A DNA stretch of 64,000 bases from Pristiophorus japonicus (Eukaryota): positions 319,300,001-319,364,000 of the forward strand of contig NC_091979.1 of NCBI RefSeq assembly GCF_044704955.1, written 5' to 3'. The notes under the pieces are model-generated. The model searched no databases and had not been told where the DNA came from. It saw only the letters and a program-made list of their open reading frames with translations. Position 1 is the stretch's first letter; each line of letters starts with the position of its first letter. Shown here one piece after another: positions 19,701-46,536 of this stretch. The position numbers and the translations under genes are program-made.

Positions 19701-20200
19701 ACACAACTCCCACTTGCGTTTTCTGTCCTTTGGTATTCTGTAGCTCCTCCCATACAGATTCCACATCATCCAAGCTAATGTCCTTCCTACAATTGCATTA
19801 ATTTCCTCTTTAACCAGCAACGCCATCCCACCTCCTTTTCCTTTCTGTCTATCCTTCCTAAATACTGAATACCCTTGGATGTTGAGTTCCCAGCCTTGAT
19901 CACCCTGGAGCCGTGTCTCCATGATGCCAATCACATCGTATACGTTAACAGCTATCTGTGCAGTTAATTCGTCCACCTTATTCCGAATACTCCTCGCATT
20001 GTGGCACAGAGCCTTCAGGCTTGTCTTTTTAACATACTTTGACCCTTTAGAATTCTGTTGTAAAGTGGCCCTTTTTGTTTTTTGCCTTGGGTTTCTCTGC
20101 CCTCCACTTTTACTATTCTCCTTTCTATCTTTTGCTTCTGTCTCCATTTTATTCCCCTCTGTCTCCCTGAATAGATTCCCATCCCCCTGCCATATTAATT
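16716..20200 (-). mobile_element. CR1 LINE ORF2 (EN-RT), interrupted by an opposite-strand CR1
   Basis: Minus ORFs 16854..17297, 18103..18420, 18377..19207, 19150..19773, 19647..20264 with EN (MGDFN, SDH) and RT motifs. Confidence 0.93.
17328..18021 (+). mobile_element. CR1 3' fragment, itself containing a minus-strand CR1 tail (~17447-17560)
   Basis: ORF 17597..17917 EFRRMRGDLIETFK; ttcttatg tail. Confidence 0.9.
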
Positions 20201-22564: not shown

Positions 22565-22751
22565 TAGTGTTTAATCAGACTTTAAGATGGAATATAACAC
22601 ATTAGTTATATTGCAAAAACATACAATCGTAACAGGTAGTTGATAGATATTCCGTCTTTAGTTCAAAACAATGATTTAAACACAGCATTCGTATCAGTTT
22701 TATACATTCATAACAGTTTTATACATTTTTCGGTATCCCTGATTTCTAACA
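22565..22751 (-). repeat. Internally deleted 3' LTR remnant of the ERV
   Basis: Starts TGTTAGAAATC after the PPT; fuses the LTR start directly to sequence matching 29626-29700; cut by Harbinger. Confidence 0.75.
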
Positions 22752-25700
22752 TATTCCCCTCCTTGAGAGAAAGTTATTTTGATCTCTCATTTCCGTACCT
22801 CTACTAACCATGCCAACTCTAGATTTTGCTAAGGGTGATTCAAAAATGAAGATTTTCCCCTTTCTTACAATCCGTTCCTTTAAACGGGAGAAGCAACCTC
22901 TGACCCCTTTCTCAAATTCAATTCACTGTTCCGGTGTTCCAATTGTGCCCTGCCTGGGCTATCCTCTGTTTCTTGTATCTCTCCTGATCTTACCCCACCT
23001 GGGGTTTCCTCTGTGTTGCTTCACATATTCCATTTTGTTGTGTTCAATTAATCAAATATCAAATACACTATCATCACAAGTTAGATAATTACCAATCGTG
23101 TGAAATAATTTGAACCTAAGAATGTACTGATATATTAGGCCCAATATCCCACCATTCTGAATGTCGTACCAATTGCACCACTTAATTGTGCAGCTTATAC
23201 TGAAGTATCTCATTTACTGTCAGTTTCACTTCGGTATCGGTTTTGAAAGAGGTTCTGTTAGACCCATAAAACATGCTACAGGAGGCACCATCAAAACCCT
23301 CATACTGGATTCATACTGCCTTTTCCCACGCTCTGTTACCTACAAAACATAATTATTATAGTTACAATTCAGTCTGACAATCAGTAGCACATCAACTAAG
23401 TATATACATGTCCAGCAAACATTGATGCAGGTAATGAAAACAGACATTGTACAGAAAGCTGAAGTTTAACATCTAATCAACAAGTCATGGACTTAAAAGA
23501 TTCTCCAAATCTCTATTTTTGTCATTAATTAGATTGATTCTCGATGGAGTATGTGTTAATTGTCTCACTTCCCTGAGCCACATTAACCATTTCACATCTT
23601 CTGTTGTCAAGTAACTGAGCATGTCTGAGACCTGTTCTAATGTCTGAAGTAAATGATGACCTCCAGCAGGAGGGTTCGATAACTGATCATTCTTAACTGG
23701 TTCTATAAGATAAAACATGCAATATTTATTCTTTCACGGTTTTCAACTGATTGATATGGTACTATTTAGCCCCCTTGGTCCTCCCCTTTTTCCCCAGGGA
23801 ATTGCAACAGATAGACCGAAGGACTGACCCCATCAATAATCGGGAATGGGGCCATTCCACCTTGGTTCGAAGCAATGTTGTTGCTTCCCATAGTTTAGTA
23901 GCATTACGATATCTCCCACTTGCTGTTCAAAAGGTCGGAACTGCTTATCGAAGTGTTTCTATGCCTGGCTTCTTGACTTCCCTGTCTGTCTGGCTACATT
24001 TCAAGCCATTTTTGGTTGGCAGTTCCCTGTACTAAGGGTGTAACTGAAGGGGTTAACAGATGGGCTGGCATTCGCATTAGTCGCCCAGTCATAGCTTGGT
24101 AGGGTGAAATACCCGTTGTGCTATGCGGGGTGGATCTAATAACTATCTGGCACATTGACAGCATGCTAGACCATTTGGTGGGGTGATCTGCACCAAATTT
24201 GTTTAACATAATTTTCAGAATTCGATTTCCTCTTTCCACCATTCCAGATGATTGTGGACGGTGGGAGATGTGAAGTTTATGCAACATACCCATTGTCCGT
24301 TGCAGCTCGGTAAAACTTTGTGCGGTATCAGCCTGAATTGGCACTCCCTGCCTGCAGCTCACCTCACCCAATAATAGGCGAGCTGCTGTCAATACTGTGT
24401 TTGTTTTACATGGAAAAGACTCCATCCATTTTGTAAACGTATCAACTACAACCAGACAATACCACAACCCAGAAGGTCCTGTAGGCAAGGGCCTATAAAG
24501 TCAATTTGAAGGTGAGACCATTGCCCCTCGGGAGGAGGGGGACTACCCAACAGTGCTCGCTTCATGTGGCACTTGGGTTTTGCTGTAAACAGGGCAGGCA
24601 ACATTCACTCTATGAGTGACGTCAGTTACACAATTATGATGCCATGCAAATTTGCGTAGTCTCTGAACAGTTGCATCGGCTGAATAGTGTCCTCCCACCG
24701 GGTGTCAGTGGAGGAGATCAAACATTTTGGGTGCCATGGATGGGGGAACACAGACAACTGGGAGATCAGATGATAGCCACCGCAAGCAGGGCCCATACAT
24801 TAACAGGAGGGCAGATTTCCCAGACTGATCTGGAGCCAATTGTGTGTCCACAGCCCATGGAGTGGGCTGAGACAACGGACATCCATCCCGATGCCATGCA
24901 ATAACAACCGCATAGGGAAGATAACTGGCCTAGAGACCGGGAGATCGATATTCCCACCTTGAATACTCGGGACAGACCTTAAGGGAGGGGTAGGAGCTTG
25001 CCAGAGGTCACCGTTAACGGTGGCATCTGTAGCAGCATGATCTGCTTGTGAGTTGCTCCGGGTGTGTAAGTTCAAAGATGGTGAGTGAGACTTCTTCTTA
25101 CCAATATAAACAGGGGCTGATCGTGTTCCGAGCATACAGTGATAAAGGTAACAAAGTGTTAATCGCATAGGCACTATCTGGCCAGGCATTAACAGGTATG
25201 TCATAAGTCATTTGGATTGCTGTCACCAGGGTTGTAACTTCAGCACATTGAGCAGAGTGGGGAATGCATTTATACTTAATTTCTCGGTCAGGCATAACTA
25301 ATTCAAATCCACTAGGGGTTTTCCATTTCTGTGATAGGATGATCCATCAATGTAAACATCCGTGGCATCACCTATTGGAGTAAGAGAGATGGGATGACGG
25401 TCGAACTTCAGTGGTGAAAGTGGACATTCATGGCTTCTGCCCTCATAAAATACGAGCTGAGGTAGAGTTGTCTGCTTTGGCGTTAATTCCAAATCTCTCT
25501 GAGTTAATAGAAGTGTCCAATGACTGAGTTGAGCAGAGGAGACCAGCGTGCCCCCCGGTTTAAGTAGAAGATTCAAGGGAGTGTGGGGGCTATGAATGAT
25601 CGGTTTATTTAAACTGATAATAAACAAGAATTGTTTGACTGCCCAAAAAGTGGCCAGCAGATGTCACTCACACACAGTAAAATTCTTCTCCACGCCAGTC

Positions 25701-26180
25701 AAAATACGAGAGGCCTACACAATTGGCATAAGTTTACTCTGTACCTCTTGACACAAAATGGCACCAAGACTCTGATCGGTGGATCCCATCTCCAGGTGGA
25801 AAGGCTGAACTCGGTCAGGCTAATCAGGCATGTGACTTGCATATCGGCAATTTTAAGGAGGGACACCGCTGTTGTATGTTCGATGATCCAGTCACAGGCC
25901 ACAGTGTCCTCTTCACCCTTTAATAGTTCATATAAGGGTTTGGCCAGCTCTGCAAATCTGGGAATGAACGAGCGCTGATATCCCACCAGACCCAGAAAGG
26001 AGAGAAGTGCTGTTTTGGATACGGGCAATGGTACCTAAAGCATAGCAATCTTATCCTGGTCGGGACTGAGTCCCTTTGGCCCCACAATAACCCCGAAAAA
26101 TATCACTTCAGGCAGCAACAATTGTGCCTTTTTGGGATTAATGTTCAACCCAGCTTTCGGAAGAATGTCTAATAACTCTT

Positions 26181-26635
26181 CCATGAAGAAAGACTGGATC
26201 GACTAGGCTTATATTCACTGGAATTTAGAAGAATGAGAGGAGATCTCATAGAAGCATATAAAAGTCTGACGGGATTGGACAGGTTAGATACAGGAAGAAT
26301 GTTCCCGATGTTGGGGAAGTCCAGAACCAGGGGTCACAGTCTAAGGATAAGGGGTAAGCCATCTAATACCGAGATGAGGAGAAACTTTTTCACCCAGAGA
26401 ATTGTGAACCTGTGGAATTCTCTACCACAGAAAGTTGTTGAGTCCAGTTCGTTGAATATATTCAAAAGGGAGTTAGATGTGTCCCTTACGACTAAAGGGA
26501 TCAGGGGGTATGGAGAGAAGGCAGGAGTGGGGTACTGAAGTTACATGATCAGCCATGATCTTATTGAACGGCGGTGCAGGCTCGAAGGGCCGAATGGCCT
26601 GCTCCTGCACCTATTTTCGATGTTTCTATGTTTCA
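26181..26635 (+). mobile_element. CR1 3' fragment inserted in the ERV RT
   Basis: ORF 26233..26538 MRGDLIEAYK; tttctatg tail. Confidence 0.93.
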
Positions 26636-29537
26636 ATATGAGTTTGTTTATCAGATGTTGCAAGCAAAAGGTCATCAACATACTGCAGCAGACAGTCAGG
26701 TCTCAAAAAAGGGTTTAAGTACCTGAGCCATCCGTTTGTGGAATATAGTCGGGGCGTTGTGAAAGCCTTGAGGCAAACATGTCCTTCATGTTCCTTTGAT
26801 CTTCAAAGGTGAAAGCAAACTTGTTCTGATCCCTTCCCTTGACAGGGATACTCCAGAACCTGGTTGAAATATCAAAGGTGGAGACGTAGCAGCGACCCGG
26901 GGGAATTTGGGACAGGAGAATGTGGTCTCCCGATCAACAGGGGCACAAGCTGGAGTAACCGAATTAAGCTTGCGATAATCAATTGTTAAACGGCAACTAT
27001 CGTCTAGTTTCCTAACTGGCCAAGTTGGAGAATTAGTAGTAAAAGTGCCAGTGTGAATAACGACCCAATAGTAGACCCAACATAAGGTTTCCTCTCAGCT
27101 GGAATAGCATACTGCTTAACAGGAGGGTGGGAGGGCCCAATAATCTTCTCCTCCCCTGACATTCTACCACAATCGTGTCTGGATTTAGCAAAAACATCTG
27201 AAAATTTACACTCAGCAAATCAACCCCGGGGTCTTCAGTCCAGGGAAGGGTGAAGTTCTCGGGTTTTTTAATCGTATGTACCAAATGGGCATCCGAACAG
27301 GCCTCGGTGGTCCCTCACTAAAGTGCCACCATAAACAATAGTCGAGAACAGCGTGGTGTGTACGTAATGTGTCACTCCCGAGAATTCCTTTCTGGTCATA
27401 AGTAGTCAGATAAACGGCAGAGCGAACATTAACGGAATCCCCATTGATAGATAGGACAATAGGAATTAACCCCTGATTAGCCACCCGCGTAGCAGCATTA
27501 AAACCAGAAAGATTCAGAGCAAGACCTGAATGGGGCAGGGTCGTGTAAAATAGTCATGGCAGAGCCGGAGTCCATGAGCATGACATGGTGGCGGCCTTCA
27601 TGATCAATAGTTGGTCTGAAGGGTCTCGCATCCTCCTCATACCAAATGGGAGAGGAGGAGGAGTTGGTCACTGGTGAGGTTGGTGACCGTCACAGTGTTT
27701 GGGAAGGGGTGGATAGTTCTGGCCATGTACCCCCACTACGGGAGACAGCTGCCACAGTTTGCCCCCCATTTGATTGTGTTGCATGGTCTCTACCATTGCC
27801 GACAAGCACTCCAGTTTCTGTAGCATCTATCTTGAATCCAGTCTGCTATCGTCCTGACCTGGAGAATGGTAACGCGGCCCATAATTTGAGCGTCGACTAC
27901 CTCGACATTCTCGAGAAATGTGACCGGTTTTTTTTACAGTGAAAGCAAGTCACATCGCGTCTGTCCCTCTCATTGGGAGAGCCCTGTGGTGGTTGGGGAT
28001 CTGGGTTTAGGGGACCCTCCACCGCTGAAACTCGAGCTTGAGGTCGAAGGGACTTGCTCGGTCCAGGCTTGAATACAGACTCCCATCAAGTCCACCCACG
28101 GGGTCCGTTTATGAACTGCTATTCCCAGAGCATCTCTTATCCCAGGCAAAAAACCGTTCAGAAACTTCAGTTTGAATTTCTTAGCTTCATTTGCATCTTG
28201 ATATCATTGGGCCTTTTCGTATTAGCCATATAACCGAGAACGAAAGGAAATAGGGCGCTCATCTGGTGAGCGCATCCCATCAGCTGGTTAAAGTCAATTG
28301 AATCCATACCCAGTCGGACGGACACTGCCTCCAACACATACCACCAATCTCTGTCTGAATCATACACATCCTGGGGGAGCACATCCCAAAGGTCCTCGGA
28401 GACACATCACAACAAAACCTGTTTTAAATCTGCCGTCTCTAATTCAGGATGGCTACGGCGGAACCTGCCCCAGTTACGGGTCAGGGTGATCGGATTCATC
28501 CCCAAGATGACGGGTCCCATCGATTCTACGAGTGCCTTTAATTCATCCGGTTTCAGACTTCTGCTAGTAGTGGTGACGCTTTCTCTCGGGGGTTGGTCAT
28601 ATGTCCCGGAGACCTCAGAATTAGTGTCAAACTCATCTTCATTATCTGCCTGGGCTGTTGTAATAGTGGTAGTGATCAGATTAACCTTCTTTGTCTCTGC
28701 CGGGGTGTTCCCTCCTGGATAAGGGGGAGGGGGCGTGAGGGTCGGGGGCTGTCCTGACAATAAGAATCTTTGTGGGATTATTTCTGTTTAGTCAGGCCTT
28801 CCGGGTTAACATTGGGGTCTCCCAGTTTAGAGCGAGTGATGGCTGCCACAACAGCTGATTGCTTTCCCAGTTTCCCCTGCAATTCTAGTATTTTTAATTC
28901 ACACTGGGAGTGACCAATGCCCACCGGAGGGGGGCTTACAAGATACTCTCTGAGAACTCCTCTTGAGTTCCTCAGTTGTGAGGACAAGAGTTTAACCTTG
29001 GATTTTAAAGACTGGTTTTGCTCAAAGGCCTGCTGATGACGTTGTGAAGCCAGTCGGGCTTCCTCTCCTCATGTCGAAGGAAAGAACAGACATTAGCATA
29101 TCGATCCTGCCAGTCCTGTCATTTTTTTTCAAGTGAAGTATTTTGTTCTAAGCGCTCGAGTTCTTTCGAGCGGACGGCACACAAGTGGGCCATATTGGGC
29201 TGTATATGACTAGCTTCTTTAAGCTTAATCTTCTTCTCATTCACTTGGGATGCTATCCCATCCCAGTGCTTGGAGTAACTACACCCCTCCTCTTGGACCA
29301 CTCTAATAACCTCTTTGGCCCTCTGGACCCCGAATTTCTCGGAGAGACTGCTCATGATTTTATGTCTACAATGAGCATCCGTGATTTGTTTTTTGGTTTC
29401 CGTGACGAAGCACACCCCCATACGGGGTTTCCTACCCAGTCGTTCCACCTGATACCCTTTATGACATTTTAGAGCAAGTCTGTCTCCAACTCGTTTCTCC
29501 ACAATAACCTTTTTACAGTCCTGCCCCCGAAGCCAAT

Positions 29538-31175
29538 TGGTTGGAAATAGCCAAGTTTAAGGCTATCTCTGGTCCCTTTAATAATCAGGATCAACGGTAA
29601 AACCAATCTGGTGGATACATTATATTTAATCAGAGTTTAAGACAGAATATAACATATTAGTTATAGAGCAAAAACATACAACCGTAACAGGTAGTTGATA
29701 CCGATTCCGATCGGACAAAAGGCTGATACAAGTGAGCAGTACTCTGGCTTGCAGTCTCTTTCTCTCGTCTAGATCTTCCTTCGGTAAAGCATGGGATCTT
29801 TCTCGAAAAGTGTTCAATCAGCTAAATTTCTGTTTCGCCCTTCCCTCACACCATCTATACCATCATTCTTCAGGAAGCTACTTTTATTCTATTTTTAGGA
29901 GTGGGCCTGACCCTGGATATTGACAAGACCGTTTGACCTTTCGAGGTGCCCCTAAAAACTTACTATCCAATAAGCTTTCTAGTTCTTTGTCTCAATTCTT
30001 GTTTCAACAACCCGCCTTAAAGATGTCTTACAATTTTGGTCACATTTCACTATTTATATCTTATCGAAGTAGCTTTTCTGTGGAATTCCTTTGATACCTC
30101 TCTGTCTCTATTCTCCCAGGAACAATCACTACACAGCCTTATTCCTCTACTCTTTGAACTATGAAGCTGATGTGGAGTATTACAAAGATGCTCAACACAA
30201 GTCTGTTTTGGAGAAAAGATTTGTTTATTAAGTACTCGATCGAGAGAAAGACAGCTTCTGCACGAGTTCAGTAACTCAGTGATCCAAACTAGCTGTTCTC
30301 CTCGAACAAGCGTCAGGTTACTATTTTTATAGTAACAGTCAAAATACATACAAAATTATGAAGTTCCGTGTGGAAGCTTTCCATTTGTTGTTTCCCTGCC
30401 GCATCACAAAGTTTCGCCTAACTTTATGATTGCAAATATTAATTAGTTAATACAATTATATTGACAGCAAGCTTCGTTACCTCCCCTGTGCGCCTTTTAT
30501 CTGATAAGTTACGTGCTACATCATTCTCAGGTCTGCGCCTCTTGGCTGATCTGCTCTCAACCAGTTGAGATTTTTCTCAATCCGCCTTTGTTTCCCGTAA
30601 TCATTTATCACCTCATGTGACCTAACCTTGGCCCAACTGTCTGGGTTATACTGTGATAAGGTGATTTATCTTCCGAAGAGTTGGAGTTTTAACATTTTCC
30701 CTGTGTTTCGGAGCACGTATTTCTTTTGTTTCTGACAGCCTTTGTTTTTGGTTGTTAACGTTACTTAATTAGGTCCCCTTTGATTAATTAGGTTCCCTCT
30801 ACTTCATTTTTTTTCTACAGAAGCAAAACCAGAAAACTGCTCACCCCAGAGTGTTACCTCTTTTACGACATAGCAACATGTTTACCGTAACTCTACAAAC
30901 TTCCTTTCATTATCTACGCCAGCAGTTTTGTTCAGGTAACTTTAAACCCTACCCGTTGCATTATACATAAAATACATCAACAAGTATTTAAATTGCCTAG
31001 CATCAGGGAGATTGTAAATAGTACAAAAAACTATACCCTCCATTTCTAAGCATTTCTCTGATTCGAATAGATATTCCGTCTGCAGTTCAAAACAACGATT
31101 TAAACATAATATTCTTATCCGTTTTACACATTCGTGACAGTTTTATGCATTTTTAGGAATCCCTGATTTCGAAAA
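29538..31175 (-). repeat. Putative 5' LTR of the ERV (~1.64 kb)
   Basis: 31065-31175 and 29626-29700 both match the 3' LTR remnant; followed by TGGCTTCGGGGGCAGGAC, a degenerate tRNA-Ser-like PBS at 29518-29535. Confidence 0.65.
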
Positions 31176-32003: not shown

Positions 32004-32783
32004 CCATTCCCCAGTCTCCCTCTCCCCGAGCCCCCATTCCCCAGTCTCTCTCTCCCCGAGCCCCCATTCCCCAGTCTCTCTCTCCCCGAGCCCCCATTCC
32101 CAAGTCTCCCAGTCCCCAAGCCCCCATTCCCCAGTCTCCCTCTCCCAGAGCCCCCATTCCCCAGTCTCCCTCTCTCCCCGAGCCCCCATTCCCCAGTCTC
32201 TCTCTCCACGAGGCCCCATTCCCAAGTCTCCCTCTCCCCAAGCCCTCATTCCCCAGTCTCCCGCTCCCCGAGCCCCCATTCCCCAGTCTCTCTCTCCCCG
32301 AGGCCCCATTCCCAAGTCTCCCTCTCCCCAAGCCCTCATTCCCCAGTCTCTCTCTCCCCGAGCCCCCATTCCCAAGTCTCCCAGTCCCCAAGCCCCCATT
32401 CCCCAGTCTCCCGCTCCCTGAGCCCCCATTCCCCAGTCACCGTCTCCCTGAACCCCCATTCCCCAGTCTCCCTCTCCCCAAGCTCCCATTCCTCAGTCTC
32501 CCACTCTCCCCAAGCCCCCATTCCCCAGTCTCCCTCGCCCGGAGCCCCCATTCCCAGTCTCCCTCTTCCCAAGCCCCCATTCCCCAGTCTCTCCCTCTCT
32601 CCCCGAGCCCCCATTCCCCAGTCTCCCTCTCCCCCACCCCCCATTCCCCAGTCTCCCTCTCCACGAGCCCCCATTCCCCAGTCTCCCTCTCCCTGAGCCC
32701 CCATTCCCCAGTCTCTCTCTCCCCAAGCCCCCATTCCCAGTCTCCCTCTCTCCCCCAGCCCCCATTCCCAGTCTCCCTCTCCT
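32004..32783. repeat. ~30-bp purine/pyrimidine-skewed minisatellite, array A
   Basis: Unit ccccattccccagtctccctctccccgagc. Confidence 0.95.
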
Positions 32784-33107
32784 CCGGCCACCATACATAG
32801 AATCATAGAATGGTTGCAGCACGGAAGACGACCATTTGGCCATCCAGCCCGTGCCGAATTAGACATATCTCATTTACATTAAACACCAAAAGACCCAACT
32901 GGAGATTTCTATCCAATCACCAAAAAGAAAATATCCCCAAACCCACTCAATGATAGATACGTTACCGATTACTATTAACACTGGCAGCAGCCAGTGACAA
33001 TCAAACGAAATGAAGATGCAGAATCGTGGATTGCTTCTGAATGAACCCTCCTTGCGACACAGCAAGTCCAGATTCTAGTCCCAGTGAACTTCACTTCGGG
33101 ATCAGCC

Positions 33108-34175
33108 TCAGGCTTGGGCTGGTGAGTTTGGGGATAATTCTCTTCGTTCAGCAGGGTTCGCTGGGCTGTAACCAGATGTCTCCTCTCCTCCTCTCCTCTT
33201 CCACACAACCGCACCGATCACAAGAACAATCAGGGCGACGGCAGCAATCACAATTCCAACAATCAAACCCCTATTTGTTCCCTCTGGCGATCCTGGAGTC
33301 ACTCGGAACGTCCCGTCCCAGTCTCGGGTCTTCCCTCCTTCTTGGCCGCTCTGCTCATACTGACAGGAATAGGTGGCTCCATCCGCGGGCTCGATCTGAG
33401 CCCATGTCGTGAGCTGGTAGGTGCCATCGTGGTTGGGCAGGATGCCCGTGGATTCCGTGTCCCTGATTGGCTCGCCATTTCTCAGGAGGGTCACTTGGAT
33501 TTCGCGAGGGTAAAAACCTGTGAGGAGACAGGAGAGTTGGGGGGCTTTAATATTTGACGCCTTGTCCACAGAAGGAAACACTTGAGGAGCAACAGCTCCC
33601 AGTTCTCTCTCTCCAGCCTTCAGGTATTTCTTCAGCCACTCGATGCACTCCTGCTCCAGGTAACTTTTGTCCTGCTGCATTTCGGCCCTGTCCTGGTCCC
33701 ACTTGTTCTTGGTGATCTCTCCCCACGGTACCGGGGTGACCCACACCAGGCGATCCTTGTCGAAGCTGATCAGGTCCTTCCCGTCCCAGCCGTACTGCCA
33801 GAAGCCGCTGGTGGTGCCGTCATCCCGCAGCTCACAGCCGCACAACCTCTGCAGCGTGTGGATCCCGCCGGTCTGGTTGGTGCGGGTTAAGACGGTCTGA
33901 ATGTTGCCTTTCATCACCTGCTCCTTGCCCCGCAGGATCTGTGTGTAGCGCTCCCAGTACTCGGCGCCCTCGCTCTCCCTGATCCACCGCTGCCGCGGGG
34001 TGTACTGCCGGCTCACACTGTCATAGTAAATAAACTGCTGGTCATCCACATAACCCACATCGGTGAACTCAGCAATGCCCGGGAGCGGAGTGATAGCCGT
34101 GTGCATGTACCGTAGGGAGTGAGAGCCTGCACACACCTCTCCACACAGAAGGGCCAGCACGGTCAGTCCAAACAT
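33108..34175 (-). CDS. MHC class I heavy chain, single-exon, UAA (classical)-like, 355 aa
   Basis: Leader MFGLTVLALLCGEVCA; alpha1 GSHSLRY..GYVDD..YWERYTQ..RTNQT; alpha2 GCE..YGWDGKD..TKNKW..YLEQECIEWLKKY; alpha3 SCLLTGFYP..PNHDGTYQ..YSC; TM GLIVGIVIAAVALIVLVIGAVVW; tail with GYSPA; no stops; aacaATG context. Confidence 0.95.
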   Translation of the reverse strand: MFGLTVLALLCGEVCAGSHSLRYMHTAITPLPGIAEFTDVGYVDDQQFIYYDSVSRQYTPRQRWIRESEGAEYWERYTQILRGKEQVMKGNIQTVLTRTNQTGGIHTLQRLCGCELRDDGTTSGFWQYGWDGKDLISFDKDRLVWVTPVPWGEITKNKWDQDRAEMQQDKSYLEQECIEWLKKYLKAGERELGAVAPQVFPSVDKASNIKAPQLSCLLTGFYPREIQVTLLRNGEPIRDTESTGILPNHDGTYQLTTWAQIEPADGATYSCQYEQSGQEGGKTRDWDGTFRVTPGSPEGTNRGLIVGIVIAAVALIVLVIGAVVWKRRGGEETSGYSPANPAERRELSPNSPAQA

Positions 34176-34272
34176 TGTTACTTCCCTCGACAGGCTGGGA
34201 TGAGCAGTTTGCAGGCAATCCTTTTCCGAGAGACCGTCCGTGAGCTGCGCCCAATTCAGACCGTGTGATTCC

Positions 34273-35126
34273 TGTGCCCAGTGCCGATACTGTGTCTCTG
34301 GGACTGTCTCTCTGTGCCCAGTGCCGATACTGTGTCTCTGGGACTGTCTCTCTGTGCCCTGTGCTGATACTGTGTCTCCGGGACTGTCTCTCTGTGCCCT
34401 GTGCTGATACTGTGTCTCTGGGACGGTCTCTGTGCCCTGTGCTGATACTCTGTCTCTGGGACTGTTTCTCTGTGCCCTGTGCTGATACTGTGTCTCTGGG
34501 ACTGTCTCTGTGCCCTGTGCTGATACTGTGTCTCACTGTGTCTCTGGGACTGTCTCTGTGCCCTGTGCTGATACTGTGTCTCTGGGACTGTCTCTGTGCC
34601 CTGTGCTGATACTGTGTCTCTGGGACTGTCTCTCTGTGCCCTGTGCTGATACTGTGTCTCTGGGACTGTCTCTCTGTGCCCTGTGCTGATACTGTGTCTC
34701 TGGGACTGTCTCTCTGTGCCCTGTGCTGATATTGTGTCTCTGGGACTGTCTCTGTGCCCTGTGCTGATACAGTGTCTCTGGGACTGTTTCTCTGTGCCCT
34801 GTGCTGATACTGTGTCTCTGGGACTGTCTCTCTGTGCCCTGTGCTGATACTGTGTCTCTGGGACTGTCTCTGTGCCCTGTGCTGATACTGTGTCTCACTG
34901 TGTCTCTGGGACTGTCTCTCTGTGCCCTGTGCTGATACTGTGTCTCTGGGACTGTCTCTGTGCCCTGTGCTGATACTGTGTCTCTGAGACTGTCTCTGTG
35001 CCCTGTGCTGATACTGTGTCTCTGGGACTGTCTCTCTGTGCCCTGTGCTGATACTGTGTCTCTGAGACTGTCTCTGTGCCCTGTGCTGATACTGTGTCTC
35101 TGGGACTGTCTCTGTGCCCTGTGCTG
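34273..35126. repeat. 38/40-bp minisatellite (~22 units) between the MHC I promoter and ATG
   Basis: Unit tgtgccctgtgctgatactgtgtctctgggactgtctc(tc). Confidence 0.95.
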
Positions 35127-35154
35127 TCTGTTCTTGCGCTTTGCCCAGTGCAGA

Positions 35155-35240
35155 GTGTTTTACACTCAGACTCCTCCGGACTGATTGGTTCGAGGGTATA
35201 TTTGTCTCCAATTACAATAAAAACAGGCTGTGAGTCAATA
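35155..35240 (-). promoter_or_regulatory. Proximal promoter elements (AP-1 TGACTCA, CCAAT, weak TATA-like tgtaaaa)
   Basis: tgagtca ~35232-35238; ctgattgg 35181-35188; ttttaca ~35157-35163 on the plus strand. Confidence 0.4.
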
Positions 35241-35311
35241 GGCTCCGAGTAGAAAAGACACGGGGAGAGTTTGTGTTGGTGCCGAAATAAACTTTCCAAA
35301 CATTGAACTAT

Positions 35312-35353
35312 CCAATCAGACAAATACTGCGAGCTGCATCATCAGTTGCCGGG
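35312..35353 (-). promoter_or_regulatory. MHC X1-X2-Y promoter module
   Basis: Minus strand CCCGGCAACTGATG (X1-like), TGATGCA (X2-like), 20-bp spacer, CTGATTGG (Y), facing the class I ORF. Confidence 0.72.
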
Positions 35354-35479
35354 TAGGTTAAAGATAATCTCCGCATCTCCCGGTCCCGAGTTCTCCCACC
35401 ACCCTCCAAACCCAACTTCCCGACTCCCAACCCCCCGAAAGCTCTGCCCACCCCCGGCAGCTCGATCTCCTGAGGGGTT

Positions 35480-35700
35480 CAAGGGATCTGCTGGGAGGGG
35501 GCTGAAGGGATCTGCTGGGAGGGGCTGAAGGGATCTGCAGGGAGGGGACTGAAGGGATCTGCTGGGAGGGGCTGAAGGGATCGGCTGGGAGGGGCTGAAG
35601 GGATCTGCAGGGAGGGGACTGACGGGATCTGCTGGGAGGGGGCTGAAGGGATCTGCAGGGAAGGGACTGAAAGGATCTGCTGGGAGGGGGCTGAAGGGAG
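35480..35700. repeat. ~24-bp tandem repeat
   Basis: Unit gaagggatctgc(t/a)gggagggg(g/a)ct, ~9 copies. Confidence 0.9.
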
Positions 35701-35856
35701 TTGCTGTGGTGTGTGAGAGAAGGCCAGGGCTGGAGAGGCCCAGTGACCTTGTCTGGAGCCCAGGGATCAGTCCAGCTCCTCCAGGCCCCCACAGAATAAA
35801 TTACACTCAACCTGGCCTCTTCTACCTCCCGCCTGGCCTCACCATGATCCTCCCTG

Positions 35857-36375
35857 ACCCATTCCCCAGTCTCTCTCTCTCCCCGAGCCCCCATTCCCCC
35901 TCTCCCCGAGCCCCCATTCCCCAGTCTCCATCTCCCCGAGGCCCCATTCCCCAGTCTTCCTCTCCCCGAGCCCCCATTCCCCAATCTCTTTCTCCCCGAG
36001 CCCCCATTCCCCAGTCTCCCTCTCCCCGAGCTCCCATTCCCCAGTCTCGCTCTCCCTGAGCCCCCATTCCCCAGTTTCCCTCTCCCCAAGCCTCCATTCC
36101 CCAGTCTCCCTCTCCCCGAGCCCCCATTCCCCAGTTTCCCTCTCCCCAAGCCCCCATTCCCCAGTCTCCCTCTCCCCAAGCCCCCATTCCCCAGTCTCCC
36201 TCTCCCCGAGCTCCCATTCCCCAGTCTCCCTCTCCCCAAGCCTCCATTCCCCATTCTCACTCTCCCCAAGTCCCCATTCCCCAGTCTCCCTCTCCCCGAG
36301 GCCCCATTCCCCAGTCTCCCTCTCCCCGAGCCCCCATTCCCCAGTCTCCCATTCCCCGAGCCCTCTTTCCCCAGT
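35857..36375. repeat. ~30-bp minisatellite, array B (same family and orientation as array A)
   Basis: Unit cccccattccccagtctccctctccccgag. Confidence 0.95.
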
Positions 36376-36740
36376 GTTAAGGGATGATCTATTTGAGATG
36401 TTTGATATGATTAAAGGATTTGATCGGGTAGATCGAGAGAAACGATTTCCTCTGGTGGGGGAGGCCAGAACAAGGGGGCATGAAATAGAAATTTGAGCTC
36501 AGCCATTCAGGGGTGATGTCAGACAGCACTTCTTCACACAAAGGGTACTGGAAATCTGGAACTATCTCCCCCAATAAGCTGTCGAGGTTAGGCCAAATAA
36601 AAATGTCAAAACTGAGATGATAGAATTTTGTTAGGCAAGGGTATTAAGGGTTACAGAACCAGGGTGGGTAGATGGAGTTGTGATACAGTTCAACCATGAT
36701 AAATTAAATGGTGGAACATGTTCCTATGTTCCTACCTATG
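36376..36740 (+). mobile_element. Old CR1 3' fragment
   Basis: agggatgatctatttgag...ttcttcacacaaagggt...ttcctatgttcct tail. Confidence 0.75.
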
Positions 36741-38049
36741 ATCAGACTAATGGATGATCGTGGATTTCTGCTGGCACTCATGAGCCAATTGTTCATTTGT
36801 TGTTGCCTCCGGGACCATTACGGGATTCCAATGGGTTTCCCCCGAACTGAGGAATGCCAGGCAGTGAGGCTGCAGAGAGGTGTTCCGGACCCATGTGCAC
36901 TGACCTGCTCATCTGTTCTGCTATTCTGACTTTACCAGCATTGCTATGTTGATTATATATGAGCTAAAAATGTAAGTTAGATACACATAAGATGGGCTTT
37001 GATTATTTTGTTCTCTTACAGCAACACACTGAATGATTGCTTGAAAGCAAAACTCGGCCAGCTTCAATGTCACTTCACGTGGGGCCCACAGAGAGACAGC
37101 ATTGACTTGGGCGACATGAAGTATAGATTACAAGATTTAATACAGGCTGGTGTGAATTATCAGGCCAGGTCTGACAACCACCTCGCATTTGTAAACTGTC
37201 AGCAAGGCAATTCAAAGGGGCAATTCAAAACTTAAAGGAAGCTGAAAAGATTCTGAGGGAGAACCATGAACATGAATTTGAAAGAAGAAGCATCATCACC
37301 TATGGAAACTATGCCTGGGTATATTATCACATGGACCAACTGACAGAGGCCCAGTTCTACCTCGACAAGCTGGAGATGATCTGTAAACAATTTGCTGATG
37401 GCTCTCGGTATACAGCACTGATACCTGAAGTATACAGGGAGAAGGGTTGGTCACTGTTGAATTCTCCTCGTCAATACTATGAAGAGGCAAAGGAATGTTT
37501 TGAGAAGACTCTGGAGGAAGATCCTGATGACACTGAATGGAACGTTGGCTATGCGACTGCTCTGTTCCGTCTGGAAGGGTTTTCTGGTACCCCAGAGAGT
37601 GGTGACCGCAGCCAATCAGTGAAGCAGTTGCGACGTGTGCTGGAACTTGATCCAGATGACTCTGTAGCCATGGTGATGTTGGCTCTAAAACTACAAGAGT
37701 TCAATCAAAAGGTGGACGAACACGAATTAGTTGAACAAGCATTGCAGAAGTCCCCTGATCTTCCATATGTAACTCGTTATGCAGCAAAATTTTACAGAAG
37801 AGAAGATGTGGAAAAAGCTGTGGAGCTGTTGAAGAAAGCATTAAAAATTACTCCAAACTCTACCTTCATACACCACCAAATAGGTCAGTGTTACAGAAAA
37901 AAAATATATCAACTGATCAAATATCCAGGCAGCAAAGCCCCTCGCAATCCTGCTTTTCAACAGAAAGCTGAGTTGATCAATTAATGCAAGTACTATTTTG
38001 AAAAGGCATTTGAGCAGAAGCCATCATTTATTTTTGCACAATTGCAAAT

Positions 38050-40680
38050 CTACAACGCAGAAGGAGGCCATTTCGGCCCATCGTGTCCACACCGGCCGAC
38101 AAAGAAACATACGGCCCTCAGTCAGCAGCCCTGAAAGTTACATATAAACGTATGAACAATGAACAATGGCAGAAAGGTAAAGAACACCCAGCCCAACCAG
38201 TCTGCCCCACACAACTGTGACACCCCTTGCACCAAAACATTCTACACTCCTCCCCAACCGGAGCCATGTGATCCCCTGGGAAAGGCAAAAACCAGATAAA
38301 AACCCAGGTCAATTGGGGAAAAAAGATCTCGGAACATTCCTCTCCAACCCATCCAGGTAATCGAAACTTGGCCAGGAGATCACCCTGGATATATTCGATT
38401 CCCTGCAGTACTTACCATCATAGCTGTGCCTGCCAACAACAGGTTATCCAGTCTAATCCCACTTACCAGCTTTAGGTCCGTGTAACCCTGCAGATTGTGG
38501 CACTTTAATTGTCCATCCAAACACCTTTTAAATGTGTTGAGGGTTTCTACATCCACCACCCTTCCAGGCCCTAAGTTCCAGACTCCCACAACCCTCTGCT
38601 TGAAAAAGCCACCCCTCAAATCCCCTCTGAACCTTCCACCAACCACCTTAAAACTATGCCCCCTCATAATTGAACCCACCACCAAGGGAAATAGGCCCTT
38701 GCTATCCACTATATCCAGACCCCTCAAAATTTTGTACACCTCAATGAGGTCTCCTCTCAACCTCCTCTGTTCCAATGAGAACAAACCCAGCCTATCCAAT
38801 GATGTGGTATATTTGGACTTTCAGAAGGCTTTCGACAAGGTCCCACACAAGAGATTAATGTGCAAAGTTAAAGCACATGGGATTGGGGGTAGTGTGCTGA
38901 CGTGGATTGAGAACTGGTTGTCAGACAGGAAGCAAAGAGTAGGAGTAAATGGGTACTTTTCAGAATGGCAGGCAGTGACTAGTGGGTTACCGCAAGGTTC
39001 TGTGCTGGGGCCCCAGCTGTTTACATTGTACATTAATGATTTAGATGAGGGGATTAAATGTAGTATCTCCAAATTTGCGGATGACACTAAGTTGGGTGGC
39101 AGTATGAGCTGCGAGGAGGATGCTATGAGGCTGCAGAGTGACTTGGATAGGTTAGGTGAGTGGGCAAATGAATGGCAGATGAAGTATAATGTGGATAAAT
39201 GTGAGGTTATACACTTTGGTGGTAAAAACAGAGAGACAGACTATTATCTGAATGGTGACAGATTAGGAAAAGGGAAGGTGCAACGAGACCTGGGTGTCAT
39301 GGTACATCAGTCATTGAAGGTTGGCATGCAGGTACAGCAGGCGGTTAAGAAAGCAAATGGCATGTTGGCCTTCATAGCGAGGGGATTTGAGTACAGGGGC
39401 AGGGAGGTGTTGCTACAGTTGTACAGGGCCTTGGTGAGGCCACACCTGTAGTATTGTGTACAGTTTTGGTCTCCTAACTTGAGGAAGGACATTCTTGCTA
39501 TTGAGGGAGTGCAGCGAAGATTCACCAGACTGATTCCCGGGATGGTGGGACTGACCTATCAAGAAAGACTGGATCAACTGGGCTTGTATTCACTGGAGTT
39601 CAGAAGAATGAGAGGGGACCTCATTGAAACATTTAAAATTCTGACGGGTTTAGACAGGTTAGATGCAGGAAGAATGTTCCCAATGTTGGGGAAGTCCAGA
39701 ACCAGGGGTCACAGTCTAAGGATAAGGGGTAAGCCATTTAGGACCGAGATGAGGAGAAACTTCTTCACCCAGAGAGTGGTGAACCTGTGGAATTCTCTAC
39801 CACAGAAAGTAGTTGAGGCCAATTCACTAAATATATTCAAAAGGGAGTTAGATGAAGTCCTTACTACTCGGGGGATCAAGGGGTATGGCGAGAAAGCAGG
39901 AAGGGGGTACTGAAGTTTCATGTTCAGCCATGAACTGATTGAATGACGGTGCAGGTGAGAAGGGCTGAATGGCCTGCTCCTGCACCTATTTTCTATGTTT
40001 CTATGTTTCTATCCTCATAGCTAAGTTTCTCCATTCCAGGCAGCATCCTAGCAAATGTCCTCTGCACCCTCTCTATTGCAATCACGTCCTTTCTATAATA
40101 CGGCGACCAGAACTGCACGCAGTACTCCAGCTGTGGCCCAACCAAAGTATTATACATTTTAAGCATAACCTCCCTGCTCTTGTATTATGTGCCTCAGCCA
40201 AGAAAGGCAACCATTCCGTATGCCTTCTTCACCACCTTATCCACCTGGCCTGCTACTTTCAGGGATCTGTGGACAAGCACTCCAAGATCCCTTTATTCAT
40301 CTACACTTTTACGTGGTCTACCGGTTAATGTGTATACCCTTTCCTTATTAGCCCTCTCAAAGTGCATTAACTCACACTTTTCCAAATTAAATTCCATTTG
40401 CCACTGTTCTGCCCACCTGACCATTAGATTGATATCCTCCTGCAGTCCATGACTTTCTGCTTCATTAACGACCACACAGCCAATTTTGGTGTCACTTGCA
40501 AACTTCTTAATCATACTCCCGATAATCAAATCTAGATCATTGATGTATACCACAAAAAGCAAGGGACCCAGTACTGAGCCCTGCGGACCCCACTGGAAAC
40601 ATCCTTCCAGTCACAAAAACATCCATTAACCATTACCCTTTGCTTCTTACCGCTGAACCAATTTTGGATCCAACTAGCAT
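38050..40680 (-). mobile_element. CR1 LINE (long 3' UTR family) interrupted by another CR1
   Basis: ORF 38380..38799 LGLFSLEQRRLRGDLIEVYK continues at 40012..40680 (KFASDTK). Confidence 0.88.
38800..40011 (+). mobile_element. CR1 RT/3' fragment
   Basis: DVVYLDFQKAFDKVPH...; tttctatg tail. Confidence 0.95.
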
Positions 40681-44185: not shown

Positions 44186-45527
44186 CAGGTACAACGTCTG
44201 AAATCCGCTGTTGGCGCTCCTCACCGCCGGCCAATCCTCCGCTCCTCACCGCCGGCCAATCCTCCGCTCCTCACCACCGGCCAATCCTCCGCTCCTCACC
44301 ACCGGCCAATCCTCCGCTCCTCGCCATCGGCCAATCCTCCGCTCCTCACCGCCGGCCAATCCTCCGCTCCTCGCCATCGGCCGATCCTCCGCTCCTCACC
44401 GCCGGCCAATCCCCCGCTCCTCACCGCCGGCCAATCCTCCGCTCCTCACCACCGGCCAATCCTCCGCTTCTCACCGCCGGCCAATCCTCCGCTCCTCACC
44501 GCCGGCCAATCCTCCGCTCCTCACCGCCGGCCAATCCTCCGCTCCGCACCGCCGGCCAATCCTCCACTCCTCACCACCGGCCAATCCTCCGCTCCTCACC
44601 ACCGGCCAATCCTCCGCTCCTCACTGCCGGCCAATCCCCCGCTCCTCACTGCCGGCCAATCCCCCGCTCCTAACCGCCGGCCAATCCTCCGCTCCTCACC
44701 ACCGGCCAATCCTCCGCTCCTCGCCATCGGCCGATCCTCCGCTCCTCACCGCCGGCCAATCTTCCGCTCCTCACCACCGGCCAATCCTCCGCTCCTCACC
44801 GCCGGCCAATCCTCCACTCCTCACCACCGGCCAATCCTCCGCTCCTCACCACCGGCCAATCCCCCGCTCCTCACCGCCGGCCAATCCTCCGCTCCTCACC
44901 ACCGGCCAATCCTCCGCTCCTCACCGCCGGCCAATCCCCCGCTCCTCACCGCCGGCCAATCCTCCGCTCCTCACCACCGGCCAATCCTCCGCTCCTCACC
45001 ACCGGCCAATCCTCCGCTCCTCACCACCGGCCAATTCTCCGCTCCTCACCGCCGGCCAATCCTCCGCTCCTCACCACCGGCCAATCCTCCGCTCCTCACC
45101 GCCGGCCGATCCTCCGCTCCTCACCACCGGCCGATCCTCCGCTCCTCACCGCCGGCCGATCCTCCACTCCTCACCGCCGGCCAATCCTCCGCTCCTCACC
45201 GCCGGCCGATCCTTCTCTCCTCGCCACCGGCCGATCCTCCGCTCCTCGCTGGCCGCCGATTCTCCGCTCCTCACCGCCGGCCGATCCTTCACTCCTCGCC
45301 ACCGGCCGATCCTCCGCTCCTCGCTGGCCGCCGATTCTCCGCTCCTCACCGCCGGCCGATCCTTCACTCCTCGCCACCGGCCGATCCCCCGCTCCTCGCT
45401 GGCCGCCGATTCTCACTGGCCGTGGCCCCCCGGCACTGCCCTCCGTTGCCACCTTGGCCGCTTCAAAACTGTCCAATTTTCGGACAATTCTGGTTTTGGG
45501 AATTCTGGATTCTGGACGTTGTACCTG
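44186..45527. mobile_element. Tc1/mariner-type MITE carrying a minisatellite
   Basis: ta-CAGGTACAACGTC at the left end and GACGTTGTACCTG at the right end (inverted repeat); right-hand TA not intact. Confidence 0.7.
44215..45420. repeat. 25-bp CpG-rich, CCAAT-containing minisatellite (~48 units)
   Basis: Unit cctccgctcctcaccgccggccaat. Confidence 0.97.
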
Positions 45528-46536
45528 GAATATAAATATTGGAGGTGGGGAAAAAGGCTGCTGTCTCACAATAAAAAATCATCCAATCAGGTTCTGGAGT
45601 CTGTTCCCTTTCCTATTGGTGGGGGAATGTGTGAGGATGTGCGAGTCCGGTAATCACTGATGGGAGCTCAGGGTGGGGCTATTGGAGGTGGGAGGTCATG
45701 TGATAAAACATCCAGGAATACGTCCAACCAGAGTTGGCAACACTACTTCAACCATCCCAGCAGCTTTTTTCATGATAGCTTTGAAATACCATTATATCTT
45801 CCTGAGCTGGGTTTTCCTCCAGGAAGGGTTTGTGTCAGAGGTGGGTCAAGCGGGGCTTCCACCGAACACTCTGACCCACGTCAACCGACCCATTTTCCTG
45901 GGTTGGGGCTCATTAGACCCGCAGGGCAGGCTCCCAGCGGGATCTCCGTTACACTTCAAGGAGCCACCACTGATAGCCAGGGAATGGTGGCATCGCACAG
46001 CAACACCAGAGAGAGGAACATCCACCATTAACGGGGGCAGAAACACCCCAAAGATTAGCAGCGCAATTTTACTTACCGCTTCAGAATGAGCAGCATTTGT
46101 ACAAACTGAGTGACTGGGGACAGAAGCGAGGGAGAGGTGCCCACTGTTGGGCCTTCTCTGTCCATAAGGGCGTTCTGCTACTTCCCCAGCCTGTATTATA
46201 AATATATCTAGATAGCAATACAAGTTGTTGTTGTATTGCCGGCCCTCACCTGGTGGCCCGTTTCCCACTCCCTGCCCCCCTCACCCCACCAACATATCAA
46301 ATGGGGTATGGGGGGACTTTCTGGTGGTGCTCTGAGGAGTGAGGTTCTGGCGGTCGGCTTCCGCACCCCATTTTCATCCTTCCCCATTTTTGGGTGGTGC
46401 AACTGAAGTAAAACCAGACCCTTGTTTCTCACTCAGTGGTGGATGTGTGAGTCGACTGTTAATTCTACAGTCACCATTTTAATTCTACCAATCTGGAGTT
46501 ATTAATTTGCAAAAAATAAACTTTAAAAATATAAAG

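What the first reader, a model, noticed from the sequence alone, without database searches (positions are those of the whole stretch)
33108..34175. Intact, completely intronless MHC class I heavy-chain gene
Seen: leader, alpha1, alpha2, alpha3, TM and cytoplasmic tail are fused in one uninterrupted 1068-bp ORF, while every other recognisable coding relic in the window is broken. Known: jawed-vertebrate class I genes normally place each domain on its own exon. Inference: this is a functional retrogene or a gene that lost all introns in place, possibly a single-exon shark class I lineage. I saw no poly(A) tract or target-site duplication. I cannot exclude that such a lineage is already described.
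Basis: partly seen in the sequence, partly recalled or inferred. Interest (0 to 1): 0.9.

Follow-up and report, generated by a model that had tools for sequence, protein, structure and literature searches.

The report
Single-coding-exon shark MHC class I gene
A Japanese sawshark gene encodes a complete, apparently working antigen-presenting (MHC class I) protein on one exon, keeps its own MHC-type promoter, and sits among interferon genes instead of the usual MHC neighbours, which is unusual for both gene structure and location.

Summary
Window 33108-34175 (minus strand) is one 355-codon ORF encoding leader, alpha1, alpha2, alpha3, transmembrane region and tail of an MHC class I heavy chain.

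It is a known public gene model of Pristiophorus japonicus (P0124, 100% identical). It belongs to a family of at least 6 proteins that are 98-100% identical.

This scan already flagged another copy 2.68 Mb away (s1-874703).

"Completely intronless" is too strong. The model adds a short 5' exon (36818-36748) spliced over a 2.55-kb intron to a site 19 nt before the ATG. That intron holds minisatellites and an exactly spaced X1-X2-Y promoter module (35349-35312).

Evidence for a working gene:
- All eight peptide-end-binding residues are kept.
- Only 3 of 79 highly conserved sites are changed.
- A long branch separates it from its nearest other relative (73% identity).
- A single unbranched DNA contig across 33355-34271 argues against a near-identical spliced parent.
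- RNA contigs cover it at low depth, but they are unstranded, and an antisense transcript spliced to the neighbouring IFIT pseudogene also exists.

No poly(A) tract or signal was found.

Best reading: a functional class I gene family that lost its coding introns through cDNA and was later duplicated together with IFIT. Teleost L-lineage genes are the precedent.

The parts
33108..34175 (-). Complete class I heavy-chain coding sequence on one exon (355 codons plus TGA). By homology: leader 34175-34128, alpha1 34127-33867, alpha2 33866-33591, alpha3 33590-33318, connecting peptide, TM and tail 33317-33111.
   Evidence: The domain limits are inferred from the alignment to 6lup and the usual class I domain starts; they were not measured.
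32799..33107 (-). 3' untranslated region, at least this long. It runs into a SINE-like fragment and the 30-bp satellite. No poly(A) signal was found.
   Evidence: An RNA contig of run X5 lies unbroken on 32799-33358. No AATAAA/ATTAAA and no A-tract.
34176..34244 (-). 5' untranslated part of the large exon. Two alternative splice acceptors: CCCAG|CCTG (exon starts at 34194) and GCGCAG|CTC (exon starts at 34244).
   Evidence: P0124 and P0001 N-terminal extensions. X6 contig 34054-34245 ends at the distal acceptor. The 50 nt before the ATG are conserved with a horn shark class I model, P0054.
34195..36747 (-). 5' intron of the public model (GT...AG), 2553 bp. It holds the 40-bp, 24-bp and 30-bp tandem arrays and the X1-X2-Y module.
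36748..36818 (-). 5' exon of this gene's public model (P0124). Its ATG gives an in-frame 30-residue extension, which is probably an annotation effect. The donor is TTA|GTCTGA.
   Evidence: Translation of 36748-36818 (minus) equals P0124 residues 1-23, 23 of 23. Frame check.
36934..36941 (-). End of an alternative 5' exon, ATGCTG|GT, as used by sister copies (P0001 and P0121 start with ML|LTDG).
   Evidence: a match on the right strand within 3 kb upstream; about 0.06 expected there by chance.
35312..35349 (-). MHC-type X1 (GCAACTGATG), 20-nt spacer holding an X2-like element, and Y box (CTGATTGG), 1.14 kb upstream of the ATG. CCAAT (35188-35184) and a TATA-like element follow.
   Evidence: Exact match; no match in any of 100 shuffles even with 2 mismatches allowed. 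Sequence. The consensus and spacing were recalled from the HLA-DRA promoter, so this is a lead, not a functional test.
34272..35126 (.). 40-bp minisatellite (21 copies) between the promoter module and the 5' UTR.
   Evidence: A horn shark class I model (P0012) also has a tandem repeat directly upstream of the homologous 5' UTR (weak, E 0.065).
32004..32794 (.). 30-bp satellite flanking the gene on its 3' side.
35889..36375 (.). The same 30-bp satellite, same orientation and nearly continuous phase, on the 5' side. The block 32795-35888 looks set into one array.
   Evidence: junctions read.
33660..37021 (+). Intron of an antisense transcript. The donor CAG|GTAAC lies inside the class I coding sequence (33659|33660), and the acceptor TTACAG|CAACAC lies at the start of IFIT exon 2 (37022).
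   Evidence: The 30 loose-end letters shown (of 71) on an X5 contig at 33659 match window 37022-37051 exactly.
37022..37984 (+). IFIT pseudogene exon 2, head-to-head with the class I 5' exons. It is frameshifted near 37200, has an in-frame stop at 37982-37984, and is then cut by a LINE.
   Evidence: IFIT5/IFIT1 residues about 102-305, E 6e-51.

Best explanation
This is a real, probably functional MHC class I heavy-chain gene of the Japanese sawshark. It is one of at least 6-7 near-identical copies.

Protein: it has a classical-type groove and should pair with beta2-microglobulin and hold peptides by their ends (inferred).

Origin: all introns inside the coding sequence were removed through a reverse-transcribed copy of its own message. 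The 5' flank survived, namely the X1-X2-Y promoter module, the upstream minisatellite and the conserved 5' UTR. This points either to recombination of a cDNA with the gene or to retroposition of an incompletely processed, upstream-initiated transcript. A plain copy of mature mRNA fits poorly. The unit was then duplicated at the DNA level together with an adjacent IFIT gene.

Expression: transcripts start at short exons 2.55-2.7 kb upstream, next to the IFIT pseudogene, and splice into the 5' UTR. Expression is low compared with the species' main class I gene (P0005).
For: Shown:
- An intact ORF with all class I domains.
- 100% identity to the public model P0124, whose extra 5' exon maps to 36818-36748 with GT-AG ends.
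- A family of 6 public proteins that are 98-100% identical.
- The Y7, Y59, R84, T143, K146, W147, Y159 and Y171 equivalents are present, as are both disulphide pairs and the NQT site (residue set from PMC8236899).
- Only 3 of 79 sites that are at least 90% conserved in 47 cartilaginous-fish class I proteins are changed, mid-range among accepted genes. Neutral drift along the 0.26 stem predicts at least 18, P=3e-6.
- Amino-acid differences among copies avoid the ectodomain: 2 of 8 fall in 78% of the length, P=0.002.
- One unbranched 961-base DNA contig lies over 33355-34271, so no near-identical spliced copy is present in that genome.
- Other DNA contigs share only the last roughly 60 bases around the stop codon and then diverge behind an AG. 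These are spliced paralogues with a short last exon.
- The X1-X2-Y module is exact.
- RNA contigs lie on 32799-33936 and on 34054-34245, the latter ending at the acceptor.

Inferred: beta2-microglobulin and peptide binding, the route of intron loss, and duplication together with IFIT (scan notes s1-874703, s1-874857 and s1-874856, not checked by me).
Against: - The RNA contigs are unstranded. At least one transcript runs antisense through the coding sequence and splices to IFIT exon 2, so part or all of the coverage could be antisense.
- Coverage by this family is about 35-50, against 17,000-75,000 for short stretches shared with P0005. The tool warns that depth cannot rank genes.
- No poly(A) signal was found.
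- Window versus the commonest copy shows 3 non-synonymous and 1 synonymous change, which does not differ from neutrality.
- The copies are nearly monomorphic in alpha1 and alpha2, unlike classical genes.
- Position 63 is Y instead of D/E/Q.
- Much of the long stem may have been travelled as a spliced gene whose spliced form was later lost. Selection since the intron loss itself rests only on the among-copy pattern.
- The X1-X2-Y consensus was recalled from memory, and no transcript start near it is shown.
- The public models' upstream in-frame ATGs would put 25-30 residues in front of the signal peptide.
Confidence: 0.55

Rival explanations
1. This is a classical retrogene. A mature class I mRNA was reverse-transcribed by LINE machinery and inserted beside or inside an IFIT gene. 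It is expressed from IFIT-side promoter activity through newly recruited 5' exons. The X1-X2-Y match would then be coincidental or without function.
For: - All coding introns are absent.
- The location is among IFIT relics and transposons, with no MHC neighbours in 64 kb.
- The model's 5' exons lie 80-270 bp from IFIT exon 2, in divergent orientation.
- The block sits inside one 30-bp satellite with nearly continuous phase, like an insertion.
- Recruited 5' exons are typical of working retrogenes (general knowledge).
Against: - There is no poly(A) remnant and no poly(A) signal, and no target-site duplication was seen.
- An X1-X2-Y module with the exact 20-nt spacing, in the gene's orientation, never appeared in 100 shuffles.
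- The sequence just upstream of the conserved 5' UTR, next to a tandem array, resembles the arrangement in a horn shark model. That would have to have been part of the transcript.
Confidence: 0.25
2. This is a transcribed but functionless copy family. The genes lost function when, or after, they lost their introns. They remain open only because the duplications are recent or are homogenised by gene conversion, and the RNA seen is antisense or read-through from IFIT and ERV promoters.
For: - An antisense spliced transcript is shown.
- Depth is very low relative to P0005.
- The 3:1 non-synonymous to synonymous count between copies is neutral-like.
- There is no poly(A) signal.
- The neighbourhood is full of pseudogenes.
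- Copies differ by 2% or less, so little time has passed for disabling hits.
Against: - Seven sequences (the window plus six public ones) are all open.
- Differences avoid the ectodomain, P=0.002.
- Conserved sites are kept along a long stem.
- The public models and one contig end support minus-strand GT-AG splicing into the 5' UTR.
- A promoter module is present.
Confidence: 0.15
3. This is an assembly artefact or cDNA contamination.
For: None beyond the unusual structure.
Against: - DNA-run contigs join the coding sequence to both flanks, and one spans 33355-34271 into the 40-bp array.
- Several annotated copies exist.
- The ORF is embedded in genomic repeats.
Confidence: 0.01

Closest known systems
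Shark classical class I (UAA), e.g. nurse shark Gici-UAA*01 (PDB 6lup) and the Squalus acanthias cDNA Q8HWH7
   Same: - Same domain order.
- 59-71% identity.
- The same peptide-end-binding residues, disulphides and glycosylation site.
- The gene falls in a fully supported clade with Squalus Q8HWH7, sawshark P0005 and Heptranchias.
   Different: - There are no introns within the coding sequence.
- The gene is multi-copy and nearly invariant among copies.
- Its neighbours are IFIT relics, with no antigen-processing genes in the window.
- Depth is low.
- Y stands at position 63.
- The identification of Q8HWH7 as Sqac-UAA*01 is from memory.
Teleost L-lineage class I genes of trout and salmon ('processed genes', Dijkstra et al. 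2007; reviewed in PMC4364491)
   Same: - These class I genes lack the introns between alpha1, alpha2 and alpha3.
- Retroposition of partially spliced mRNA has been proposed for them.
- They are multi-copy and lie outside the classical region.
- Salmon L genes respond to interferon and virus (PMC6797598, PMC11695323), which echoes the IFIT neighbourhood here.
   Different: - L-lineage molecules lack the peptide-anchoring residues (PMC4364491); this gene keeps them.
- This gene groups within shark U-type sequences, not with teleost L.
- Here the TM and tail introns are gone as well.
The sawshark's own annotated paralogues (P0001, P0121, P0122, P0123, P0125; this gene itself is P0124)
   Same: 98-100% identical proteins of one family. 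P0124 is this window's gene.
   Different: - Eight variable residues, six of them in the last 77 residues.
- Different 5' exon use in the models.
Reverse-transcriptase-mediated intron loss by recombination of a cDNA with its gene (general mechanism)
   Same: Precise loss of all neighbouring coding introns while the promoter, the 5' flank and a 5' intron remain.
   Different: The mechanism is not demonstrated here. The gene is also not at a recognisable ancestral class I site.

Membership tests
MHC class I heavy chain | alpha1-alpha2 peptide-binding superdomain | tested here: met
   Pfam PF00129, residues 17-192, E 8.4e-53. 6lup aligns over residues 17-277.
MHC class I heavy chain | membrane-proximal C1-set Ig domain, transmembrane region and cytoplasmic tail | tested here: met
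   PF07654, residues 199-275, E 1.1e-14. The hydrophobic residues 303-325 and the tail align with other shark class I proteins.
Classical (peptide-presenting, Ia/UAA-type) class I | conserved residues that hold the peptide ends (Y7, Y59, R/Y84, T143, K146, W147, Y159, Y171) | tested here: met
   Precursor residues Y23, Y73, R98, T155, K158, W159, Y172 and Y184 are identical to those of 6lup in the alignments. Part of the residue set is cited from PMC8236899. Position 63 is Y instead of D/E/Q.
Classical (peptide-presenting, Ia/UAA-type) class I | high allelic polymorphism in alpha1 and alpha2 | tested here: inconclusive
   Seven sequences from the reference annotation differ at only 2 ectodomain residues. 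No population data are available.
Classical (peptide-presenting, Ia/UAA-type) class I | tight linkage to TAP and immunoproteasome genes (class Ia region; PMC10751288) | tested here: not met
   None of these genes occurs in the 64-kb window. The neighbours are IFIT relics, LINE and ERV fragments and satellites. The wider chromosome was not testable.
Classical (peptide-presenting, Ia/UAA-type) class I | conventional exon per domain structure | tested here: not met
   One uninterrupted ORF, continuous in DNA contigs.
LINE-mediated processed retrocopy | absence of the parent's introns | tested here: met
   This holds for all coding introns. Paralogues with an intron just before the stop codon exist in the same genome. 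A 5' intron is present in the public model.
LINE-mediated processed retrocopy | 3' poly(A) remnant preceded by the parent's poly(A) signal | tested here: not met
   No A-run of 6 or more and no AATAAA/ATTAAA within 2.6 kb.
LINE-mediated processed retrocopy | target-site duplication | tested here: inconclusive
   None was recognised. Both flanks are the same 30-bp satellite, which hides short duplications.
LINE-mediated processed retrocopy | parental promoter not carried along | tested here: not met
   An exact X1-N20-Y module lies 1.14 kb upstream in the gene's orientation; no match in any of 100 shuffles.
Teleost L-lineage class I | phylogenetic placement in lineage L and loss of the peptide-anchoring residues | tested here: not met
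   The gene groups within shark U-type sequences, and the anchoring residues are present. Only the gene structure is alike.

The most novel reading that the evidence does not exclude
A self-contained, intron-free class I cassette with its own X1-X2-Y promoter and a classical peptide-type groove has been copied together with IFIT genes to sites outside the shark MHC proper. It works there as an interferon-linked, extra-MHC peptide presenter. This would be the first MHC class I family outside the MHC in an elasmobranch, against the rule stated in PMC10751288. It would also be a convergent counterpart of the teleost L-lineage 'processed' genes, but with peptide binding kept.
Probability: 0.3. Interest if true: 0.75.

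Novelty: new variant of a known kind. Interest (0 to 1): 0.58.

Why it matters
Class I genes are a textbook case of one exon per domain. The only known intron-poor working members (teleost L lineage) have lost peptide binding. A shark family that lost all coding introns yet keeps a classical groove and an MHC-type promoter would show that a complete antigen-presenting unit can be rebuilt through cDNA and then spread by duplication.

If the IFIT cluster lies off the MHC chromosome, this would also be an exception to the report that all elasmobranch MHC genes map to the MHC. That report covered white shark, catshark and sawfish only (PMC10751288).

The intron-free genomic copies also offer a simpler source for the 'spliced' class I fragments that this scan noted inside Harbinger MITEs of the same genome. 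Those fragments could have been captured from DNA rather than from mRNA.

Tried and rejected
I could therefore not fetch the genes of P0005, Heptranchias, Heterodontus or the other sawshark copies, and exon structures of relatives remain unknown.
- The exact look-up of the 355-aa protein was blank only because the public model is 385 aa long.
- I first took the N-terminal extension of horn shark P0010 as a sign of an ancestral 5' UTR intron. Inspection of all extended models shows it can be an upstream in-frame ATG in the same exon, so I dropped that argument.
- The X5 loose end at 34135 maps to 23308-23337 with one mismatch, but it has no GT-AG on either strand. I set it aside as coming from another locus.
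- Searches for ISRE, NF-kB and GAS motifs between 31000 and 37400 gave one ISRE-like core at 36482, inside a repeat-like stretch. This is no evidence for interferon control.
- Self-comparison gave no empty-site copy of the IFIT unit; only 735 bp of IFIT are duplicated.
- No terminal inverted repeats bound the block.
- The search of earlier findings by sequence was blank, which means nothing.
- Two shark class I lineage papers (PMC7002201, PMC8454915) are not held.
- In one search I joined the two exons inside a local script, only to check the reading frame. The check by reference is.

Full report
**1. The observation**

The window holds one ORF at 33108..34175 on the minus strand, ATG to TGA, 355 aa.
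- Pfam finds MHC_I (residues 17-192, E 8.4e-53) and C1-set (residues 199-275, E 1.1e-14).
- The best solved relative is nurse shark Gici-UAA*01 (6lup, E 5.8e-94). It aligns without interruption across alpha1, alpha2 and alpha3 (naming from PMC8236899).
- A hydrophobic segment (residues 303-325) and a tail follow in frame.
- tblastn finds no second class I piece in the window.
- In a DNA run, a single 961-base contig lies on 33355-34271 and runs on into the upstream array. Other contigs tie the coding sequence to its 3' flank. The structure is therefore genomic and not an assembly or cDNA artefact.

**2. Whose gene it is**

- The closest proteins are from Pristiophorus japonicus.
- One 90%-identity cluster holds six public proteins of 355-385 aa.
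- P0124 (385 aa) is 100% identical to the window ORF over all 355 residues. The other five differ at 1-5 residues.
- The next relatives are a single sawshark protein, P0005 (73%), Squalus acanthias Q8HWH7 (71%) and Heptranchias (68%).
- The scan had already followed up another copy 2.68 Mb away (s1-874703) and noted one 173 kb away (s1-874857). I did not verify those notes.

**3. Not quite intronless**

- P0124 carries 30 extra N-terminal residues. Residues 1-23 are encoded exactly by 36818-36748 on the minus strand.
- The donor there is TTA|GTCTGA and the acceptor is CCCAG|CCTG, so the large exon starts at 34194, 19 nt before the ATG. That call joined the exons locally for a frame check only.
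- P0001 and P0121 start with ML|LTDG. This fits ATGCTG|GTAAAG at 36941-36936 and the acceptor GCGCAG|CTC at 34245/34244.
- An RNA contig of run X6 lies on 34054-34245 and ends exactly at that acceptor.
- The gene therefore has a 2.55-2.7 kb 5' intron. Only the canonical coding sequence is on one exon.
- The in-frame upstream ATGs are probably by-products of annotation.

**4. What lies in the 5' intron**

- A 40-bp array (34272-35126), a 24-bp array (35472-35706) and a 30-bp satellite (35889-36375).
- The same 30-bp satellite, in the same orientation and nearly continuous phase, flanks the 3' side (32004-32794).
- At 35349-35312 (minus strand) stands GCAACTGATG, then 20 nt, then CTGATTGG. This is the X1 box, the spacing and the Y box of MHC promoters. 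No match appeared in 100 shuffles, even with two mismatches allowed. CCAAT and TATA-like elements follow. I took the consensus from memory of the HLA-DRA promoter, so the match is a strong lead rather than proof of function. It agrees with scan note s1-876504.
- Without the 40-bp array, the Y box would lie about 280 bp from the ATG, a normal class I geometry.
- The 50 nt before the ATG are conserved with horn shark class I models (P0054, 24 of 33 residues including the untranslated part).
- Another horn shark model (P0012) has a tandem repeat directly upstream of that segment (weak).

**5. Is it kept by selection?**

- The tree puts the window and P0001 on a 0.26 stem inside a fully supported clade with P0005, Squalus and Heptranchias, in an unresolved fork with the first two.
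- Of 79 sites conserved in at least 90% of 47 cartilaginous-fish class I proteins, the window changes 3 (F24M, P35A, S347L). That places it 20th of 48 sequences. Neutral drift along the stem predicts at least 18, P=3e-6.
- All eight peptide-end-binding residues, both cysteine pairs and the NQT site are present. Position 63 is Y rather than D/E/Q (PMC8236899).
- Among the seven family sequences, only 2 of 8 variable residues lie in the first 278 residues, P=0.002.
- Caveat: the stem may largely predate the intron loss.
- The window differs from the commonest copy by 3 non-synonymous changes (E279A, V317A, R345G) and 1 synonymous change (33555). That is too few to test.

**6. Parent and age**

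- The unbranched DNA contig over the leader-alpha1, alpha1-alpha2 and alpha2-alpha3 junctions argues that no near-identical spliced copy exists in that genome. Such a copy would make the contig branch at exon ends (my inference from how contigs are built).
- Two other DNA contigs, one 4913 bases long, match only 33054-33113/33117 at 95%. They then diverge behind an AG in gene orientation. These are spliced paralogues whose last exon holds the final codon or two.

**7. Transcription**

- Runs X5 and X6 have no recorded kind. However, an X5 contig joins 33659 to 37022 with CAG|GTAAC...TTACAG| on the plus strand, so X5 is RNA.
- That junction is antisense to the class I gene. It leads into exon 2 of an IFIT pseudogene (IFIT5/IFIT1 residues about 102-305, E 6e-51; frameshift and stop).
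- X5 contigs cover 32799-33936 at equal depth on both sides of 33659, so most of the RNA is not that spliced form. Contigs carry no strand, however.
- Sense transcription is supported by the GT-AG models and by the X6 contig end.
- Short stretches shared with P0005 reach depths of 17,000-75,000, and their loose ends read NQGVKG, as in P0005. P0005 is thus the dominant class I message and this family a minor one, within the limits the tool states.
- A run of another organism code (X7) also holds 33566-33868 with one difference.

**8. Mechanism**

- Loss of every coding intron at once points to a reverse-transcribed message.
- The retained promoter module, upstream array and 5' UTR, together with the missing poly(A) tail and signal, fit two routes better than LINE-mediated insertion of mature mRNA. 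One is recombination of a cDNA with the gene. The other is retroposition of a partly processed, upstream-initiated transcript, as proposed for trout L genes (PMC4364491).
- The repeated class I-IFIT pairing noted by the scan suggests later segmental duplication.
- The protein should work as a beta2-microglobulin-associated peptide presenter. That is inference from conserved residues.

**9. Literature**

- I found no paper on intron-free shark class I genes.
- Teleost L-lineage genes are the precedent for the gene structure, but they lack the anchoring residues.
- Verissimo et al. 2023 report no MHC genes outside the MHC in three elasmobranchs, none of them a squalomorph.

**10. Verdict**

This is a real, annotated, probably functional single-coding-exon class I gene family: a new variant of a known kind and of moderate to high interest.

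Noticed in passing
window 33659/33660 to 37021/37022, plus strand: A cryptic donor inside the antisense strand of the class I coding sequence is spliced to exon 2 of the IFIT pseudogene in an RNA run. Plus-strand transcripts therefore run through the class I gene from somewhere upstream.
   Followed up: partly
window 37022-37984 (+) and 8394-9128 (+): Two IFIT relics, 91% identical over 735 bp. The first has a frameshift near 37200, an in-frame stop at 37982-37984 and a LINE cutting its 3' part. The second lacks its 5' part.
   Followed up: partly
window 32004-32794 and 35889-36375: The same 30-bp satellite, in the same orientation and nearly continuous phase, lies on both sides of the 3.1-kb block that holds the class I gene, as if the block had been set into one array. 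Related G+C-rich arrays lie at 4122-7933 and 44211-45653.
   Followed up: partly
window 34225-34272 compared with protein P0012 (Heterodontus francisci): The stretch between the 40-bp array and the conserved 5' UTR (translated ...SALGTGITRSELGAAH) resembles the unit of a tandem repeat that a horn shark class I model reads through just upstream of its own 5' UTR (E 0.065). A repeat-prone site upstream of shark class I genes may be old.
   Followed up: partly
window 32796-32850: A roughly 32-bp core (ATAGAATCATAGAATGG...) at the 3' end of the gene's unique flank has a depth of about 30,000 in the DNA run. It is a fragment of a very abundant shark repeat.
   Followed up: no
same genome, other windows (scan notes s1-874478, s1-874696, s1-877408, s1-877520, s1-877184): Harbinger-type MITEs said to carry 'spliced' class I fragments. 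Since intron-free genomic class I genes exist in this genome, those fragments could have been captured from DNA of this family rather than from mRNA.
   Followed up: no
window 22565-31175 and many LINE reverse-transcriptase ORFs (e.g. 12654-13763, 18377-20264, 38495-39913): The gene lies in a transposon-rich stretch with an ERV-like element (scan note s1-876615) and CR1/L2-like LINE fragments. An assembly gap is at 56212-56425.
   Followed up: no
run X7 (organism B) on window 33129-33277 and 33566-33868: A small 2021 run filed under another organism code holds pieces 97-99.7% identical to this gene. It is either the same species under another label or a close relative that keeps the gene.
   Followed up: no
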